From NCBI RefSeq assembly GCF_000150275.1, contig NW_002060968.1, forward strand, positions 43,797-107,796: 64,000 bases of DNA. The letters run 5' to 3'. A program made the position numbers and the translations under genes. The notes under the pieces were generated by a model. It was not told where the DNA came from. It was given only the letters and a program-made list of their open reading frames with translations, and did no database searches. Source of the stretch: Trichoplax adhaerens. Its lineage: Eukaryota; Animalia; Placozoa. Positions 39,815 to 49,223 of this stretch are shown in pieces; position 1 is the stretch's first letter, and every line of letters starts with the position of its first letter.

Positions 39815-40086
39815 ATACTGGATGTGACTAGTTTTTCATTAACATGTTTTTTCTGCTATTTCGCCCTTTTACAGATCGTATGGTCTAGTCATAAATATTG
39901 ATAGGTGACACCTGTGAAGGACTTCTCTCCTTCCAATAATTTAGCATGCTGGCAGATATGGGTAAATAAATATTTGAATTTTCATATTGTTGTCTAAGAT
40001 ATTCAATATCGCTATCAGAAAGATCTAAATCCTTTACTAATCGAATCCATTCATCTCCAATAGTCAATTATAACAACTAAGCATTT
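39815..40086 (-). pseudogene. Vestigial third Death domain downstream of the Roco stop codon
   Basis: After TAA at 40087-40089 the frame reads KCLVVIIDY. A frameshift then leads to IGDEWIRLVKDLDLSDSDIEYLRQQY...SMLNYWKER, followed by a stop and a shift to DL*KGEIAEKHV. This is a complete death-fold pattern broken by stops and frameshifts. Confidence 0.7.
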
Positions 40087-43000
40087 TTATAACCATATTT
40101 TTCGAATGCTCTTTAATTGAATTAAAATTTGAACAGATATATCACTTGAGGTTGAATTTTTCCTCTACAGGACATTCTTTGCAAGATTATTTTATTACAC
40201 TAATGGGTGCTAGAATCTTTGATAAGCTGAAACATCAATGTAGCTTGTGGCAACTTAGTATGCTACTTGTTAATAACACCCTTTATCAAAATAACTATAC
40301 AGCGTACGTATGTCATATATTATATATAGTCGGATGATATAGTTATCATTTGGTTATAAGATTTTCTAACTAAATAATTTTAGACAAAATTCATGTAATT
40401 AACTATGCATGGCTACTTGAGATCCCTCACTTGCATTTGCATAATCTTTTATTTTTGCTTCGATTTGATCTGCCAAAGTATTGATATTCATCTTGCGTAT
40501 TACCGAAACTACTTTAAAAATATCAGGTTTAGAACCAGCTTTTTCTTTCCACAACAATAGAGCTCGAATCGTCTTTTCGAAAGGAGTATGAAACTCAGGA
40601 TTCAATCTAATTTCATCTATTTCTTGGATCGTTAAGCCCAATAACATTTCCAAACGGAATAATCTATCTTGATTAAGTTCAGCAGCTATGATATTGAAGC
40701 ATAAGTCAAACATTCCTAAGTTAAAATAAAGTTGACAACATTAAGAAATTTTGCTCTTCAACGATTCAAGTTTGTAATATGATCTAAAATGAGTGAAACA
40801 TTAGCCATAATGTTTCAACAATTTCATTTCATGATGATTTTAACTTTAACTCACAAGGTAGACTGTAACGCAATGGTTATTTTTGTTGTAACTAATACTG
40901 TCTATTAGTATACATAGTTTCATAATTTAATGCAATAACTCGCTTTAAATATAGTTAAATCAAATGACTAGAAACAGTGTCTTTTTAGCCATCGTTTTTG
41001 GCTGGAAAATTATGACATATTATTTTACTTGTATATTGCAGTTACTATTAAAAGAAAAGGTAGTGTAATATATTCTCAGTTAATTTTTAAAAATGCCAGT
41101 GAATATATTACCTTGTCTGCTAGACGTTAGCGCCGTTTGATGCTCTTCTTGGAATTGTTGTGATTGATCTTGATTATGAAAAATATCATTAACTAAATGC
41201 TTTCAATATTCATGACAGTAATTTTGAATAAATAGAAGCTACGCGATCAAAATTTGATCTGACGTTCGCCAATAACTTATCTTTGTACAGTGAATTGTTT
41301 CAGTTAATCAATAATAGAATTATCATCTGCCATTTTGGGGCTAATTAGTCTTGTTCTAGCTTCATATATACATTATACATTATTTACTGTGGGATTTGCT
41401 TATTAAAACAACTAGAATTTAAGATATACGAATATACTGTGAAATAAAGAATGGGTATACCATACACATTGAATGGCTATTTATGATCGGAAACCCAAAG
41501 ATTTAATATAGATGCTATTTAACATAAGTTTACGTTGCTATGATTACATATTTTGTAAGTATGAAATCTTTTTAAAACCTAAATTTAAATCTTCATAGAC
41601 ATTTTATGTAATTAAAGTAATTTTATGAAAGAAATTCTTCTATTTGGACGCTTTTATATTATAAACTCGTTTGCAGTATAAAGAATTTAAAAATTAAGAT
41701 AAATAAAACGAATTAATTTTAACTCGAAACTTTATCCTACCTGGTAATTTCTCCTGCTCAAAAATCTGCCACTCACGTACTGATTTCGATTGAAAGTAGA
41801 TACAACACGCTGAACACTTGATAGCATCCGTCTTGCCGATTAAATGAGTAATCACTTTTGTTAACTTTTTACAAGCAGAGCACTTTACGTAAAATCGATA
41901 TTTAGAAGATTTCAACTTTGGCATCCTGTCACTGACCACCTCTTTTAGCTTTTTCTTTATCATTATATGCGGTTTAATGTCGTAAATAAAACGTTTAACA
42001 TTTTCCGCAACATCCTTGATTAAATCTTCCGCCGGGATCTTATAGCAAAATTGCAGGCCAATATAACAATCTATTTTCTTGATAATAATCTCACATGGAT
42101 AATCTACTAAGTGATATTTTGCACATCGATGATAAATTTCTACTTGCGGATTGCTCCATATTTTTAAACATGCGGATAAATGGCAATGAAATATTCCCAT
42201 CGGTATGTAAGACACTGAATCATATCCAATATATAACCAATCTGATTGGTAATAATCTGCCAGCTCTAGCTCAGTCGATGAACGTAGTAAATACGGTACA
42301 AAGTATTGACGTTCAGCCGTATTTCTATCATCGCAATTTTCACTCTCAATCTTACAGATGATGTGATAACTTTCCATTAATTGTAAAATAAACTCTTTCT
42401 CAGTTTTATTTAATTTAAATTCAGCTGTGGCGTAATTTAAACATAATTCTGGCATTTTACCAGTCTTATAAACCATTTCAAAGCAATCCTGTATTCCAGA
42501 ATTCATAAATTTGCTTGTTTTATCACCAATTTTAATAATTGATTGAAATATTCTGAGTAACCAGTCAAGATTGGTTACAATCATTCCATCTAATCCTTTC
42601 TTCTTACAAAATACGATTTCGCCTATATCACGTAAATAGAGTAGCATACTACGTAATGTTGCATCGTCTTCATACAATCCGCAGTCTGTAGCTAGCTGTT
42701 TGATTTCATCAAAGGTCATAATGTTACGTATCCTACGTGCAATATCACCGAAAGGAGATTCCGATATAGCTGCACCAGCTTTCCTAGATTTAAAGTCGGT
42801 GGATGTATGTAATATTGATGCTAGAATATACCATCGAATAGGAATCGATTGTCGCATAAATTTTCGATTGGTGGCAAATTGTTTGATTAGCTCATGGAGA
42901 TCTCGATTAGTGTTTTGACGTCGCTCAATGGCTGTTTGGGTATTATCTTCGCAATTGCAGTGAAATATGATGCCAGAACTGCATATATTATATTTATAGT

Positions 43001-46000
43001 CTGGCATAGCTTCGGTTAATGCTTTTGTAAATGTATGAAATTTTCGTTTGCGCTCCTCCTCATCTATTATCTGATCACCGTGTGATGCAATCAAAATCAC
43101 AACTGGTAAATTATATTCTATTTCTATTCCGTTATGAGTTACGTTAACTTTATCTTGACCGTCATAACTGCCAATAATCGATGTAAGCCATTCTTGCATG
43201 GCCTGTCGATAAGTCATATTAATGGGTTTGTTATCTCGATCGATAATAGCATCATCAATATCGCGTAAGATATTAAATACTAAGATATAAAGACTATTTC
43301 CAGATAGAAATGGACGATGAGCCACATAGTAGATAGCCTGACCTCCCAAATCGGTCAATTTTCCATAGCGATCATCGGTGTCGCCTTCAATTTTGCCCTT
43401 TAAACCGGTCAGTGTTCGCATAAATTCTTCATAGATTACAATCTTGTCACCTGGCTTTGGCATTGAATCTCTCGTTGGCTCTATATCATTATTGGGAATA
43501 GCTGTAGATGAATTTAGATTGATATTTTTCGACATGCGATTTTTAACTAATTCCATTTTTGGCTCTTTTGCCGTAAATGTAACCATGTGGCTTCCATCTT
43601 CCTCTATTTTCCGCATGCTTTGGCAATTAATGACGGTCTCTTCATTATCGATTAGAATATCTGTTTGGTCTAATAAATAAGTTGAATTTTCTTCATCTTG
43701 AACATTCGAGTTATTAATATTCATTGTATTTTTTAACTGTTCGATTACTATCAAGACCTTTTTATGTAATATCATTCGAAAATCAGCTTCTGTCTTATCA
43801 AACATATTAAATATGATCAGATTTGACAATTTCTTAACTTCGTCCGCAATAATAGTTTCGCTAGTAAAAGTGATATATCCATTATTTATGAATGCACTTA
43901 TAATAGATGTTTTACCAACATTTTCAGGACCAGCAATAACAATTTTGGTAAAATCATTGCGACACTTTCCGATTTTCAACGCCTTGTCATAAGCCGATAA
44001 ATATTCTTTATTATCTATAGCTAGCGATAAAAAGATGTTGGCAGAATTATGAATTAGATAAGCTTGAGAAATACTCTGCTATTAGCCAGTATCAATTAAC
44101 ATTGTAAATTTAATTCTTAAGCTATTTCTAGCGAGTTATTTTACATAACATTGCCAATATTGCAATACATTATCGTAGGATTAGTATATAATATCTTCAT
44201 TATCTTACTTTTAGAATCTTCATCATTTTCTCCATCAAAATTTGCAATGATGTTTTCAAGACTAAGATCTATTTTAATGAATCCATAATGAACAAGGTTA
44301 TTATTACGACTTATACGAATTAGAAATTAAAATATTTACCTAGTAGAATTTCCGCAACGTAATTGGATAATAGTGAATTTGATTGATTTTGAAGTAACAT
44401 TTCATATAGAATATCTGCTGTTTCTTTCCTTTTTAGACGGTAGAGACTGGCTATTAATGTTGAAAGGGAATACTGTGAAAGAATTCTCTCCTGCAAATAA
44501 TTTAGGTTTTGAACGGAAATAGCCAAAAGGGATTGATGACTTGAATTTTCGTCCTGTCGGTCAAGATTCCCAGTATCATCAACTGAAAGGCCTAAATACC
44601 TTGCTAATTGAAACCATCCATCTGCAATTTTATTTTTAATGACGGAATAACATTTGTCTAATGGATAAATAAAATTAGCTTCTAAATATTAGATAACGGC
44701 CAAATGAATAAACCTACATAGTTTATTGAATTAGGATTCCCTTAGCAAAATTGCTTATAAAAACCATTCATATACTTTTATAACTAGTCGCACTAATTTT
44801 TACGGTGTGAAGATAAAAAAAATTGACAGCAACAATAATGTATACTAATATTGAAAGGCTATTAACATTGTAAGTAGCCTAGTAGAACTAACCAACAAAT
44901 TCCTTTATTGCTTTATCTTCATTTTTCATGCTTACGGAACTTGCACCACTTGTTGCTCTATATTCGTTATATTCTGCGCCTACAGTATACGTACAATATT
45001 AGAACAAACTTAAGTAACATTTGCTTACTATAATAGTTTACTCTAATATTTTTTAACTAAAAATTAATGAAATTGTAGCATAATTATCAAAATTAGCAAA
45101 TACACTAGTGGATACCAATACGAAAGGATCATCCTATGGATGGGAAGGATTTTGATAACACAAAGTTACTGTAATATCACTCTTATTTGAATAAATGATT
45201 GTTTAATGTACTAATAATGCCTAATGCAACATTTTATATATGTACAGTATATGTTGAATTCTTTGCATAATAATTAAACTAAGAACCAACCAATAAAACC
45301 TATCGCTCTTTAATTACTGAAACACTTTGCCAATCAATTAATATGGATACTCTGCGCAATATTATTGTTATATTCATGTTATAGTGTTTACTGCTGATAT
45401 AATAACTAACATTAGTCTTAATTGTTAAGATTTAGATATGACTGCTTATTTAATGTAATTATCGATATTTAGTAACTTATAATAAATATGAGTACGTAAT
45501 AAAAAACAGTATTTAAGGCTGTGCAAGCTAAGCACGAGAGAGAGTTATTACGAAGAGTTGTAGATTAGATCGGATCTTGTTACTCGTTGGTAAGATATCG
45601 CTATTAATTTAGTTTTGTTCAATTACTCGTTGGTAACTTCTATTTTATAACTAATAAATTGTATATAGCCAAATGTAGATTCTGTTTTTATTATTTATTA
45701 CCAGATCCCAACAATTATAAAATGTAAAGAGCTCTTAAAACGATCGATCATGTTTTTATTTTTAAGCCTGCGTATATATAATTAAGTAAATAGATCTGGA
45801 TGGAAGATTATCTTGTTGACAACTAGAAAAGAAGTAGTGCAATCAATGCCATACTGGTACGCAATCTTACAATATATGTGGTTTTTGTTAATTCTTTTTT
45901 TGTCTTGCATACTGAGTTATATTTTTACATATTAAATCATTTTCGTTGTCTATGCACAAAAACACTTTATGAAGGTATTGGATAGCGGACAAATTACGAT

Positions 46001-47357
46001 TTTGCATACAAATACAGAAATTACCTTCTGATGTTGATGTAGAAAGATTGATAATGAGTGACTGATTGATTTTGTCATTTTGTATAGGAAGGTGAATCAT
46101 TTTTGATGTTTGTGGTATAGCAGCGGCCTTTCTGTTTTTTTGTTTTTGATTATTACATTGAGTAATTTTTTCTTTAGCCCTGGCAATTTGAGGGTGACTT
46201 TCTCCATAAAGATTGCTTAGGCTAGTGATAGATTTTTCATAGAATAAGATTGCTTGATCATAATTAGATTTTCGATAATGGACATGTGCTTGATTTCGAA
46301 AGGAAAGCGCTGTATTAGGATGATTGTTACCTAGGGTTTTCAAGTAGACTTGCGATGCCTTGTCATACATAGATAGCGCCTCATCGTATTTCTTTTGCTT
46401 ATCATAGACGAACCCAATATTGTTATACGTTGTAGCAATACTTGGATGATTTTCATCAAGCTGTGACTTTTTAATCTCTAGTGATTTGTTATACATTGAT
46501 AGAGCATCATCATACTTGCTTTGATTCAAATAGACACTTGCAATGTTGCCATATGTTGTAGCAATACTTGGATGACAGTCGCCAAGTTGTTTTAGTTCAA
46601 TCTCCAGCGATTTGTTATACATTGATATAGCATCATTATACTTGCCTTGATGATCATAGATTTGCCCAGTGTTACTATATGTTGTAGCAACACTTGGATG
46701 ATTATCACCAAGTTTTTCTAGTTGAACTTCTAGTGCTTTGCTATTCATTGATAGAGCATCATCATACTTGCCTTGCTTAATATAAATATTTGCAATGTTA
46801 CCATATAATGCAGCAGTATCTGGATGCTTGGCGTCAATTTTCCGGTTAATCTCCAACGATTTAAGATACATGTCCAAAGCCTTATCATATTTACCTTGGT
46901 CAAAGTAGGCTACGCCAATTTTACAATATGACTCGCTGACATTAACATGCTCTTTTTCTAGAAATTCTAATTTCATTTCAAGCGATTTGTTATAATCACT
47001 CAAAGCGCCAATCAGATCACCTTGTAATCGTTTAATATCCCCGTGGTTATCTAAGCATTGAGAAATTCTCTTTTGATCTTTTATTTCCTTGGCTAATTTC
47101 TCTGCTTTTCCTCTCCATTTGTTTGCTTCTATTAGTTCACTTTTTTCCCGAAAAGAATTAGCCATATCAAGATAAATATCACATTCAAGTCGAACATGAT
47201 CCTGGCTAATTTTCGGTATAGATTCAATTTGAATTGCAGCCTGTTGATAATAACTTAATGCGAGCTTATAACTGCCTTTCTTATGACATTTTCTACCACT
47301 TTCGTGTTTAAATTGAATTTCCTTGAAGCTAGTCGATTTGGAAGTCCAAATGCCCAT
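40087..47357 (-). CDS. Roco protein, TPR-Death-Roc-COR-Death, ~1509 aa; complement(join(46025..47357,44893..44979,44340..44657,44209..44268,41741..44014,41112..41192,40417..40715,40087..40164))
   Basis: Exon 1: 42-aa TPR repeats (LGDNHPSVATTYSNTGQIYDHQGKYNDAISMYNKSLEI). Exon 3: death domain (KIADGWFQLARYLGLS...LIASLYRLKRKETADIL). Exon 5: Roc motifs KIVIAGPENVGKTS, DLGGQAIYYVAHRPFL, LYILVFNI and VILIASHGD, and COR motifs IPIRW, LLYLRDIGEIVF, IVTNLDWL, YFVPYLL and IPMGIF. Exon 7: death domain (LLGLTIQEIDEI...ALLLWKEK...LADQI). All junctions are GT-AG and in phase; total 4530 nt. Joining is predicted, not transcript-verified. Confidence 0.82.
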
Positions 47358-48194: not shown

Positions 48195-49223
48195 ATCTTA
48201 GGGTTAATGACTGATTGATTTATGGTATCTTGTTGTAAAGGGTGATGAATGATTTTGGAGGCTTGTGGTATAGCCGCAGCCTTCTCAATTTCTTATAGTT
48301 GATGGTGACATTGAACAATTTGTTTTTCATCTTTGACAATTTGAGGGTGATTTTCTCCATAGAGATGGCGAAGGCTATTGATGGACTTTTGATAGAACGA
48401 GATTGCTTGACGATAATTAGATTGCTGATAGTTGACTTGAGCTTGATTTCGAAAGGAAAGTGCCGTATCAGGATGATTTTCGCCTAGTGTTGCTAAGCGA
48501 ATTCGAACAGATTTCTTATACATGGATAGTGCATCGTTGAAGTTGTCTAGCTTATAATATGTAAGTCCAATGTTACATGTTGTAGCAATTCTTGGATGAT
48601 TATCACCAAGTTGCGCTTGTTCAACTTTCAGCGATTCCTTGTATACTGATAGTGCGTCATCATATTTGCCTAGATAATAATAAACTAGCCCAATTCCATT
48701 GTATACTGTTGCAATACTTGGATGATTATTGCCAAGATGGGCTAATTTAATTTTGAGTGATTTGTTATACATAGATAGGGCCTCATCATACTTGCCTTGC
48801 TTACTATAAACAAGTCCGATGTTGCCATATAATGTAGCAATTTCGAGATGATCATCACCAAGTTGTTCTAGTTTAATCTGCAATAATTTATTGTAACTAT
48901 TAGAGCGTCATCATATTTGCCTTGTTCCTCATAGCCACTTCGTCTAGCAGTTTCTTACTTAATATGTCAGCTATTTCTCTCCGAAGACTAGCTTTCATCA
49001 ATTCATTTTCTTTTAGATAACAGTTAGCCATGTCGAGATAAAGATCATATTCAAGATAAAGACGACTCTCGCTGCTCTCTTGTATCGATTGGATTTGAGT
49101 TGCAGCTTGTTGATAATAAAATAATGTGCGTTCATAATAGCTTTTCTTAGCAAATTTTACGCCCGTTTCGTATACAGATTTAATTTCGTCAAGGGTAGTC
49201 GATTTGATACTTTGATCGTCCAT
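48195..49223 (-). pseudogene. Disrupted duplicate of the Roco TPR exon
   Basis: Paralogous along its length (YYQQAATQIQSI vs YYQQAAIQIESI; HPDTALSFRNQAQV vs HPNTALSFRNQAHV; KAAAIPQASKII vs KAAAIPQTSKMI). It has an internal deletion, two frameshifts near 48895-48940 and a premature TAA at 48293-48295. Confidence 0.85.

What the first reader, a model, noticed from the sequence alone, without database searches (positions are those of the whole stretch)
40087..47357. One ~1509-aa TPR-Death-Roc-COR-Death protein: candidate NLR-like immune receptor built on a Roco GTPase switch
Seen: four ORF-track entries and four small exons join through GT-AG junctions with no phase conflict into TPR array, Death, Roc, COR, Death. 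Established: Roc-COR is the dimerisation-regulated GTPase module of LRRK2, DAPK1 and MFHAS1; death folds nucleate signalling complexes; repeat sensor + NTPase switch + death-fold effector is the layout of NLR/APAF-type receptors. Inference: this is a kinase-less, lineage-specific receptor in which Roc-COR replaces NACHT/NB-ARC and death domains flank the switch on both sides. It sits among conserved housekeeping genes. Placozoan Roco expansions have been noted in general terms, so novelty of this exact architecture needs checking.
Basis: partly seen in the sequence, partly recalled or inferred. Interest (0 to 1): 0.88.

Follow-up and report, generated by a model that had tools for sequence, protein, structure and literature searches.

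The report
Placozoan TPR-Death-Roco-Death gene, transcript-confirmed
This is a real, expressed Trichoplax gene for a large kinase-less GTPase-switch protein with TPR repeats in front and a death domain on each side of the switch. It is one member of an already published placozoan gene family, and its immune role is still untested.

Summary
Spliced transcript contigs from four studies join seven minus-strand exons, not eight. They give one 1483-aa reading frame with no internal stop: a 7-unit TPR array, a Death domain, Roc, COR, a zinc-ribbon-like CxxC...CxxC module and a second Death domain.

- **Junctions:** The 41741/41192 junction is wrong; the acceptor is 41168.
- **Domain calls:** these rest on Pfam, profile matches to solved Roco structures, and predicted folds. 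The Roc-COR model hits LRRK1, LRRK2 and C. tepidum Roco. The middle domain model hits FADD and RIPK1 death domains.
- **NLR comparison:** it is an analogy only, because there is no NACHT or NB-ARC domain.
- **Prior knowledge:** at least 17 Trichoplax ROCO genes with TPR, CARD and death domains were published in 2014. The Trichoplax sp. H2 ortholog is deposited as "Nephrocystin-3".
- **Family size:** this genome holds about 45 or more Roc-COR loci. At least three others have the same five-part order.
- **Other animals:** kinase-less Roc-COR-Death proteins also occur in amphioxus, echinoderms and molluscs.
- **Earlier in this scan:** the family was found several times on other DNA of this genome.
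- **New details:** a corrected gene model, all introns in phase 1, a tail death domain whose history differs from the gene body, and pN/pS near 1 between H1 and H2.

The function is inferred, not shown.

The parts
46025..47357 (-). Exon 1 (CDS from the ATG at 47357). It holds an N-terminal helical region and seven 42-aa TPR units of the kinesin-light-chain/NPHP3 type (about aa 98-391, window about 47066..46185), then a low-complexity tail. The donor is at 46025.
   Evidence: The ORF is. Pfam gives TPR_12 at 259 bits in 6 stretches and TPR_NPHP3 at 127.7 bits. The donor is used in runs X4 and X6.
44893..44979 (-). Exon 2, an 87-nt linker (aa 445-474).
   Evidence: Joints 46025>44979 and 44893>44657 appear in X4 and X6. 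Phase is 1-1. Pfam finds nothing.
44340..44657 (-). Exon 3, the middle death domain (aa 474-580). It is divergent and has lost the family's near-invariant Trp.
   Evidence: Pfam Death scores 21.4 bits, below the 22.6 cutoff. The family DD profile gives i-E 2e-8. It is 32-42% identical to the same-position DD of paralog loci L001, L002, L005 and L006. The AF2 model has pLDDT 80.5. Its top ~30 Foldseek hits, bar one CARD complex, are death domains; the best is FADD 3ezq_B, TM 0.60, E 0.028.
44209..44268 (-). Exon 4, a 60-nt acidic linker (aa 580-600).
   Evidence: Joints 44340>44268 and 44209>44020 appear in X4 and X6.
42969..44020 (-). Exon 5, first part: the Roc GTPase. G1 is GPENVGKT, G3 is DLGGQ and a G4-like motif is SHGD. 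Between strands 2 and 3 there is an inserted helical pair with a disordered stretch of about 80 aa.
   Evidence: Pfam Roc scores 31 bits against a cutoff of 27. The alignment of 18 paralogs is. The profile matches C. tepidum Roco 3dpu (E 5.5e-11), M. barkeri Roco2 4wnr (1.5e-9) and LRRK2 Roc. The AF2 model has low pLDDT at exon-5 residues 47-65 and 105-186.
41919..42938 (-). Exon 5, middle part: the COR domain (COR-A and COR-B).
   Evidence: Pfam COR-A scores 36 bits against a cutoff of 35.3. Foldseek hits on the exon-5 model are LRRK1 8e05 (5e-15), LRRK2, C. tepidum Roco 6hlu and 3dpu, and the COR-only entry 3dpt (1e-8).
41741..41906 (-). Exon 5, end: a zinc-ribbon-like module. CSAC...CSAC lies at exon-5 residues 713-716 and 735-738. 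The donor is at 41741.
   Evidence: The four Cys are conserved in 90% or more of 18 paralogs. The AF2 model shows four short strands at 707-743 with pLDDT near 90. Pfam zinc_ribbon_6 gives only E 0.15.
41112..41168 (-). Exon 6, a 57-nt Gln-rich linker (aa 1360-1379).
   Evidence: Joint 41741>41168 appears in all four runs. Joint 41112>40715 appears in X4, X10 and X11.
40399..40715 (-). Exon 7 coding part: the C-terminal (tail) death domain, with the stop codon at 40401-40399.
   Evidence: Pfam Death scores 24.8 bits on the exon alone and 35.3 bits in the H2 ortholog. The family DD profile gives 6e-20. In the tree it sits with the tails of L007 and L012.
40082..40398 (-). 3' UTR. ATTAAA lies at 40117-40112.
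   Evidence: X10 contig 1 runs 268 nt beyond 40350. Poly(A)-like signals are.
48293..49223 (-). Flanking relic: a broken duplicate of the TPR exon (107-aa and 196-aa open frames). It is not shown to belong to the transcript.
   Evidence: H2 annotates it as a separate 262-aa gene.
39885..40067 (-). Flanking relic: half a death domain of the 'middle' type, about 20 nt beyond the transcript's end.
   Evidence: Pfam Death scores 27.1 bits over profile positions 14-59. It falls in the middle-DD clade with support 95/92 and is 41% identical to exon 3.

Best explanation
**Shown.** One expressed, spliced Trichoplax gene encodes a 1483-aa cytosolic, kinase-less Roco protein. Its parts in order are:
- a TPR array of 7 units;
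- a death domain;
- a Roc GTPase with intact G1, G3 and a G4-like motif;
- COR;
- a Cys4 zinc-ribbon-like module;
- a second death domain.

It belongs to a placozoan family of about 45 or more Roc-COR loci. These are assembled from phase-1 exon modules, and the tail death-domain exons have been exchanged between lineages.

**Inferred from what is established for Roco proteins and death folds.**
- Roc-COR acts as a nucleotide-controlled switch that changes the protein's dimer or monomer state, as in C. tepidum Roco and LRRK2.
- The TPR array binds a partner or ligand, or holds the protein closed.
- The two death domains then nucleate homotypic death-domain assemblies. These recruit adaptor or caspase-type partners for a cell-death or defence signal.

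The layout parallels APAF-1/NLR proteins and the Roc-COR-Death half of DAPK1. No ligand, partner or output is known.
For: - **Gene model:** spliced contigs from four studies support it, one of them an on-record RNA library. The frame is open, with GT-AG junctions and phase-1 introns.
- **No retrocopy:** the genome holds only one copy of exon 5 at 100% identity, and the next best is 53%. The intron-less contigs therefore do not come from a retrocopy.
- **Conservation in H2:** all splice sites are conserved in Trichoplax sp. H2.
- **Roco membership:** supported by Pfam Roc and COR-A, a profile search against solved structures, and Foldseek, where the top 35 hits are all Roco proteins.
- **Death folds:** supported.
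- **GTPase motifs:** intact.
- **Family size and architectures:**
- **Modular history:** the Roc-COR tree puts the gene with L006, L003, L001/L002 and L004/L005 (support 100). Its tail DD groups with the tails of L007 and L012 (97/92). An AU test rejects one clade for the tails of that body clade (p 1.6e-9).
- **Literature:** Roc-COR is described as a switch equivalent to STAND NTPases, coupled to repeats and death folds (PMC8195603, PMC7159879). The Trichoplax ROCO expansion is in PMC4104024.
Against: - No experiment or expression response ties this gene to immunity or cell death.
- The Roc hit covers only the P-loop part of the Pfam profile, and a long insert splits the domain. GTP binding is untested.
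- The middle death domain scores below Pfam's cutoff, has lost the conserved Trp, and its helix-3 region is poorly predicted. It may not be competent to assemble.
- Between H1 and H2 there are 22 nonsynonymous and 6 synonymous differences, giving pN/pS 0.92. This fits relaxed constraint as well as it fits diversifying selection.
- The full transcript rests on two overlapping contigs from different runs, not on one read-through molecule. Three of the four runs are RNA only by inference from their spliced contigs.
Confidence: 0.6

Rival explanations
1. The protein is the same, but it is not a sensor of microbes. It would act as a housekeeping regulator of stress-induced cell death, the cytoskeleton or vesicle traffic, as DAPK1, LRRK1/2 and MFHAS1 do. 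On this reading TPR and the death domains are plain scaffolding.
For: The closest characterised relatives by sequence and fold are LRRK1/2 and bacterial Roco proteins. DAPK1 carries Roc-COR-Death. The placozoan innate-immunity survey did not list ROCO genes among its receptors (PMC6321704).
Against: The family is large, clustered and prone to swapping domains. This gene evolves at pN/pS near 1. Both are unusual for core housekeeping regulators and typical of conflict-related families.
Confidence: 0.25
2. The gene is transcribed but drifting. It would be a redundant member of a birth-and-death family under relaxed constraint, on its way to becoming a pseudogene.
For: pN/pS is 0.92, and omega of 0.3 or less is rejected (p 0.007). 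The middle death domain is degenerate. Broken TPR and death-domain relics flank the gene. Several family loci carry stops.
Against: A 1483-codon frame stays open in both H1 and H2, and all 12 splice sites are kept. The GTPase motifs and four zinc-ribbon cysteines are intact. The gene is expressed in four studies.
Confidence: 0.12
3. The TPR reading frame (ending at the stop at 45888) is a separate gene, and the Death-Roc-COR-Death part is another.
For: A 179-nt contig in X10 (45786-45964) covers the retained start of intron 1. Some transcripts could therefore yield a 489-aa TPR-only product.
Against: In X4 and X6 the 46025>44979 joint lies inside contigs that run on into the Death and Roc-COR exons. 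The retained-intron contig has depth 2.95, against 12.6 for the exons of the same run. The same TPR-DD-RocCOR order recurs at paralog loci.
Confidence: 0.03

Closest known systems
Trichoplax ROCO family (Civiero et al. 2014, PMC4104024; H2 ortholog RDD39303.1 'Nephrocystin-3')
   Same: It is the same family. Roc-COR is flanked by TPR repeats and by death or CARD domains. The H2 ortholog is about 98.5% identical, with 21 substitutions in the alignment. Loci L001, L002 and L006 share the TPR-DD-RocCOR-DD order.
   Different: The paper lists at least 17 genes; this genome holds about 45 or more loci. The public H2 model (1524 aa) reads 32 aa past the donor that the transcripts use and starts exon 3 eight codons early. 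The name 'Nephrocystin-3' reflects only the type of TPR.
DAPK1 (death-associated protein kinase 1)
   Same: It has repeats, then Roc-COR, then a C-terminal death domain, and it acts in cell death. This rests on general knowledge and on PMC8195603.
   Different: This gene has no kinase, no calmodulin-binding segment and no ankyrin repeats. It has TPR repeats instead, a second death domain in front of Roc, and a zinc-ribbon-like module.
LRRK1/LRRK2, C. tepidum Roco, M. barkeri Roco2, MFHAS1
   Same: The Roc-COR core is the same by profile and by predicted fold. DxGGQ matches the bacterial Roco motif. MFHAS1 also lacks a kinase.
   Different: This gene has no LRR, kinase or WD40 domain. Roc carries a long insert between strands 2 and 3. 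Death domains flank the core.
APAF-1 / NLR (STAND NTPase receptors)
   Same: The logic of the layout is the same: a repeat array, a nucleotide switch and a death-fold adaptor. A paralog (TRIADDRAFT_62071, P0003) even fuses Death-NB-ARC-APAF1_C to Roc-COR.
   Different: The switch is a Ras-like GTPase with COR, not an AAA+ STAND module. The repeats are N-terminal. Roco proteins are known to form dimers, not wheel-shaped oligomers.
Kinase-less Roc-COR-Death proteins of other invertebrates
   Same: Examples are amphioxus P0087 (TPR-Roc-COR-Death), sea urchin P0083 (Death-Roc-COR-Death), and oyster, scallop, brittle-star and Owenia Roc-COR-Death proteins.
   Different: They are only 22-30% identical in Roc-COR. 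None of those sampled has all five parts in this order. It was not tested whether the shared order is inherited or convergent.

Membership tests
Roco proteins | A Ras-like Roc GTPase domain with G1, G3 and G4 motifs | tested here: met
   Pfam Roc scores 31 bits against a cutoff of 27, covering only profile positions 1-39 because an insert splits the domain. The motifs are GPENVGKT, DLGGQ and SHGD. The profile matches 3dpu at 5.5e-11, with the G1 and G3 stretches aligned. The fold is supported.
Roco proteins | A COR domain directly behind Roc | tested here: met
   Pfam COR-A scores 36 bits against a cutoff of 35.3. Foldseek hits include the COR-only entry 3dpt (1e-8), LRRK1 and LRRK2.
Roco proteins | GTP binding and hydrolysis, with COR-mediated dimerisation | not testable with these tools
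   This needs purified protein.
Death domain superfamily (tail domain, exon 7) | A match to the death-domain profile | tested here: met
   Pfam Death scores 24.8 bits against a cutoff of 22.6. The family profile gives 6e-20.
Death domain superfamily (middle domain, exon 3) | A match to the death-domain profile and a six-helix fold | tested here: inconclusive
   Pfam scores 21.4 bits, below the 22.6 cutoff. The family profile gives 2e-8. The same-position domains of paralogs score 1e-15 to 1e-21. The top ~30 Foldseek hits on the AF2 model, bar one CARD complex, are death domains, but the best E is only 0.028. Five helices are predicted, with the stretch 22-40 unstructured.
NLR / STAND NTPases (NACHT, NB-ARC) | A central STAND AAA+ NTPase domain | tested here: not met
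   No exon, and not the H2 ortholog, has a NACHT or NB-ARC hit. The switch is Roc-COR.
DAPK1 orthologs | An N-terminal Ser/Thr kinase with a calmodulin-binding segment and ankyrin repeats | tested here: not met
   No kinase or ankyrin hit is found.
Nephrocystin-3 (the public name of the H2 ortholog) | Orthology to NPHP3 beyond the TPR array | tested here: not met
   Only the TPR array matches (TPR_NPHP3, 127.7 bits). The rest is Death-Roc-COR-Death, so the name is an automatic label.

The most novel reading that the evidence does not exclude
The placozoan TPR-Roc-COR-death-fold family, this gene included, is a working intracellular surveillance repertoire built on a GTPase switch instead of a STAND ATPase. 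Specificity would lie in fast-evolving TPR arrays. Output would be rewired by swapping phase-1 death-fold exons between genes. It would be a second, independently expanded solution to NLR-type immunity in an early-branching animal.
Probability: 0.25. Interest if true: 0.6.

Novelty: new member of a known kind. Interest (0 to 1): 0.3.

Why it matters
If the family acts in defence or controlled cell death, it would show that early animals built receptor-like repertoires around a Roco GTPase as well as around NB-ARC/NACHT modules. It would also offer a simple, kinase-free system for studying how Roc-COR, the module mutated in LRRK2 Parkinson's disease, couples nucleotide state to assembly.

For this locus the practical gains are smaller:
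- a transcript-supported gene model that corrects the public H2 model;
- evidence that death-domain tails move between genes through phase-1 exons;
- a record that the automatic name "Nephrocystin-3" is misleading.

As a discovery it is modest. The family is published, and the scan has met it repeatedly in this genome.

Tried and rejected
- **Single-sequence search of solved structures with exon 5:** only a weak hit, 4wnr at E 0.014. A profile of 18 paralogs was needed.
- **Pfam on the small exons (E2, E4, E6 regions):** nothing.
- **Word-index homolog search with the H2 protein, region 640-1400:** it returned only Trichoplax proteins. Distant relatives came from the exhaustive representative search.
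- **Second batch of paralog loci:** The census therefore covers 27 of about 45 or more loci.
- **One Pfam call:** exceeded the residue limit and was resent with fewer proteins.
- **Papers on 'Trichoplax' plus 'nephrocystin-3':** none. No functional paper on placozoan ROCO genes was found.
- **N-terminal MGIWTSK as an N-myristoylation signal:** considered. It is shared only by the H2 ortholog, and the pattern is recalled from memory, so it remains a lead only.
- **Joined model:** the joined spliced protein was sent to no database tool. It was put together only inside the sandbox scripts, from window.fa, to check frame and length and for local profile scans. Database searches used exons by reference or the public protein P0001.
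Full report
**What is in the sequence**

The minus strand between 47357 and 40399 carries four long open stretches and several short ones. Each was scanned by reference against Pfam:
- The 489-aa frame (47357..45888) is a TPR_12/TPR_10 array scoring 259 bits. It also passes the NPHP3-type TPR cutoff.
- The 761-aa frame (43979..41694) has Roc at 31 bits (cutoff 27), covering only profile positions 1-39, and COR-A at 36 bits (cutoff 35.3).
- The 104-aa frame (40713..40399) has Death at 24.8 bits (cutoff 22.6).
- The open stretch 44688..44323 has Death at 21.4 bits, just under the cutoff.

The base composition is about 30% G+C. The closest public proteins are from Trichoplax. The window lies in a 105.6-Mb assembly of 1414 contigs, at C1389:43797-107796.

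**Gene model from transcripts**

Logan contigs of four runs from four studies were laid on 40350-46300. They give these joints, all GT..AG on the minus strand:
- 46025>44979, 44893>44657, 44340>44268 and 44209>44020, each in X4 and X6;
- 41741>41168 in all four runs;
- 41112>40715 in X4, X10 and X11.

X11 is on record as an RNA library. The other three are RNA only by inference from their spliced contigs. The genome has only one copy of exon 5 at 100% identity and the next best at 53%, so the intron-less contigs cannot come from a retrocopy.

One X4 contig of 3522 nt runs E5-E4-E3-E2-E1. One X10 contig of 1996 nt, and one X11 contig, run E7-E6-E5. The seven exons add up to 4452 nt, or 1483 codons, with no internal stop. 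All six introns are in phase 1.

The joined protein was assembled only inside the sandbox, for this frame check and for local profile scans.

Its low end, 40087, matches the transcript's 3' end (contig to about 40082; ATTAAA at 40117-40112).

The public Trichoplax sp. H2 model RDD39303.1 (P0001, 1524 aa, named "Nephrocystin-3") differs from the transcripts in two ways. It reads 32 aa past the 46025 donor, and it starts exon 3 eight codons early.

Minor forms exist:
- A low-depth X10 contig covers the retained start of intron 1.
- One X4 joint uses an acceptor at 41359. By my reading of the sequence this would end the protein after 18 more codons, without the tail death domain.

**Domains**

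*TPR.* Seven 42-aa units span aa 98-391.

*Roc-COR.*
- An alignment of exon 5 with 18 paralogs shows G1 (GPxxVGK[ST]), a variable insert, D[FL]GGQ and SHGD.
- A profile of that alignment matches C. tepidum Roco (3dpu 5.5e-11; 6hlu; 8r4b), M. barkeri Roco2 (4wnr 1.5e-9) and, more weakly, LRRK2 Roc and COR.
- An AlphaFold2 model of exon 5 has pLDDT 74.9 and pTM 0.76. It is disordered at residues 47-65 and 105-186.
- Its 35 best matches in the PDB are all Roco proteins: LRRK1 8e05 at 5e-15, LRRK2, 6hlu, 3dpu and the COR-only entry 3dpt.

*Zinc-ribbon-like module.* Behind COR lie two CxxC pairs that are conserved in 90% or more of the paralogs. They are modelled as four short strands with high confidence.

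*Middle death domain.*
- A family death-domain profile built here hits it at 2e-8. The tail domain scores 6e-20.
- It is 32-42% identical to the domain at the same position in paralog loci.
- Its AlphaFold2 model (pLDDT 80.5) finds almost only death domains among its first ~30 matches: FADD, RIPK1, ankyrin, DR3, TRADD.
- The best E is 0.028, it lacks the family's conserved Trp, and the helix-3 region is not modelled. I call it a divergent death fold.

No exon has a NACHT, NB-ARC, kinase, LRR or ankyrin hit.

**The family**

An exhaustive search with exon 5 found 369 cluster representatives at E of 0.001 or better, 45 of them below 1e-30. Those below 1e-30 whose source was looked up are all Trichoplax H1 or H2 proteins.

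The window's own genome gives 78 matches at roughly 45-55 loci, several with stops. I fetched 26 of these loci and scanned six-frame translations with the same three probes. The layouts found, including this locus, were:

| Layout on one strand | Loci |
|---|---|
| TPR-DD-RocCOR-DD | 4 (this locus, the tandem pair L001/L002 on the same contig, and L006) |
| TPR-RocCOR-DD | 9 |
| Other (TPR-RocCOR, DD-RocCOR-DD, RocCOR-DD, or RocCOR alone) | remaining 14 |

The five-part order is therefore a small subfamily, not a unique gene. The public models of the close paralogs (P0002, P0156) simply miss their tail exon.

Outside Placozoa the Roc-COR core is 22-30% identical and sits in similar company:
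- amphioxus: TPR-Roc-COR-Death (P0087) and DED-Death-Roc-COR (P0063);
- sea urchin: Death-Roc-COR-Death (P0083);
- oysters, scallops, a brittle star and the annelid Owenia: Roc-COR-Death;
- Owenia: a Bcl-2-Ras-Roc-COR-caspase protein (P0054).

**History of the parts**

- In a Roc-COR tree the window groups with L006, L003, L001/L002 and L004/L005 (support 100).
- In a death-domain tree its tail groups with the tails of L007 and L012 (97/92). Their Roc-COR bodies lie in another well-supported clade.
- The tails of L001 and L002 belong to a different death-domain type.
- An AU test rejects a single clade for the tails of the body clade (p 1.6e-9). The group was named after I had seen the identities.
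- L012 and L013 have nearly identical bodies but tails of different types.
- With every intron in phase 1, exon exchange is the simple explanation. An earlier follow-up in this scan reached the same conclusion on another cluster (s1-734983).
- The gene is flanked by relics. A broken copy of the TPR exon lies upstream (49223..48293). Half a death domain of the middle type lies just beyond the 3' end (40067..39885).

**Constraint**

Against the H2 locus (L027) all splice sites are conserved. The coding sequence differs at 28 sites, 6 synonymous and 22 nonsynonymous, giving pN/pS 0.92. Intron divergence is 0.84%. An omega of 0.3 or less is rejected (p 0.007), and 0.5-1 is not.

The differences are uneven. 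There are none from exon 2 to exon 4, but 21 in the 770 nt from exon 6 to the stop.

This fits either diversifying selection or relaxed constraint. The data cannot tell them apart.

**What it most likely does**

Shown: an expressed, intact, kinase-less Roco protein with two death folds, a TPR array and preserved GTPase motifs.

Inferred:
- Roc-COR is a nucleotide-driven dimer or monomer switch, as established for C. tepidum Roco and LRRK2.
- The TPR array binds a partner or keeps the protein closed.
- The death domains nucleate homotypic assemblies that recruit adaptors or caspases.

The parallel between Roc-COR ("AP-GTPase") and STAND NTPases in apoptosis and immunity proteins is already published (PMC8195603, PMC7159879). 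So is the Trichoplax ROCO expansion with TPR, CARD and death domains (PMC4104024, cited again in PMC11378527). The placozoan innate-immunity survey did not consider these genes (PMC6321704). I found no functional work on them.

**Verdict**

The finding is real. Its coordinates and junctions are corrected here. It is a new, well-documented member of a known kind.

The scan has already reported this family on other DNA of the same genome, including the TPR-DD-Roc-COR-DD pair 156 kb away.

The immune-receptor reading remains an untested analogy.

Noticed in passing
window 48293-49223 (-): A broken duplicate of the TPR exon lies 0.9 kb upstream of the start codon. It has a 107-aa N-terminal frame and then a 196-aa TPR frame. 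In Trichoplax sp. H2 it is annotated as a separate 262-aa gene (L027:2133-2982).
   Followed up: partly
window 39885-40067 (-): Half a death domain (Pfam 27.1 bits, profile 14-59) lies about 20 nt beyond the transcript's 3' end. It belongs to the 'middle' death-domain type and is 41% identical to exon 3, not to the tail type. It looks like a relic of a lost paralog or an exon duplication.
   Followed up: partly
L003 (G000:C1383:391500-401499); P0003 = TRIADDRAFT_62071: A close paralog of the Roc-COR body is fused to Death-NB-ARC-APAF1_C. That puts a STAND ATPase and a Roco GTPase switch in one protein.
   Followed up: no
P0054 (Owenia fusiformis CAH1786849.1): An annelid protein combines Bcl-2, Ras-like, Roc, COR and a caspase domain in one chain. 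It is a striking all-in-one cell-death architecture.
   Followed up: no
window 41359 and 41270-41511 (-): One run (X4) shows an alternative acceptor at 41359 after the 41741 donor, plus contigs inside intron 5. By my reading the frame would stop after 18 codons, giving a form without the tail death domain. The evidence is weak: depth 5 and 28 letters on the shorter side of the joint.
   Followed up: partly
window 45104-45508 and 45786-45964: There are contigs inside intron 1. One, in the on-record RNA run X11, has unknown meaning. One, in X10, covers the retained 5' part of the intron and would allow a 489-aa TPR-only product.
   Followed up: no
window 40399-41168 versus 44020-44979; sites 40655, 40672, 40680, 40682: Divergence between H1 and H2 is very uneven. 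It is zero across exons 2-4 and their introns, and 2.7% from exon 6 to the stop. Four sites in the first helices of the tail death domain differ from the assembly in three runs, including X10, which is otherwise near-identical to the window.
   Followed up: partly
L012 and L013 (G000:C1381:424330-434329; C1375:187629-197628): These two paralogs have nearly identical Roc-COR bodies but tail death domains of different types. It is a clean case of a recent tail swap.
   Followed up: partly
window 47340-47357 (-): The protein starts MGIWTSK, which fits the N-myristoylation pattern as I recall it. The H2 ortholog keeps it, but most paralogs do not.
   Followed up: no
L027:4001-10962 (GCA_003344405.1, RDD39303.1): The public H2 gene model disagrees with the transcripts at two splice sites. 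It has a 32-aa read-through after exon 1 and an 8-aa extension of exon 3. Its product name, 'Nephrocystin-3', is an automatic label.
   Followed up: yes
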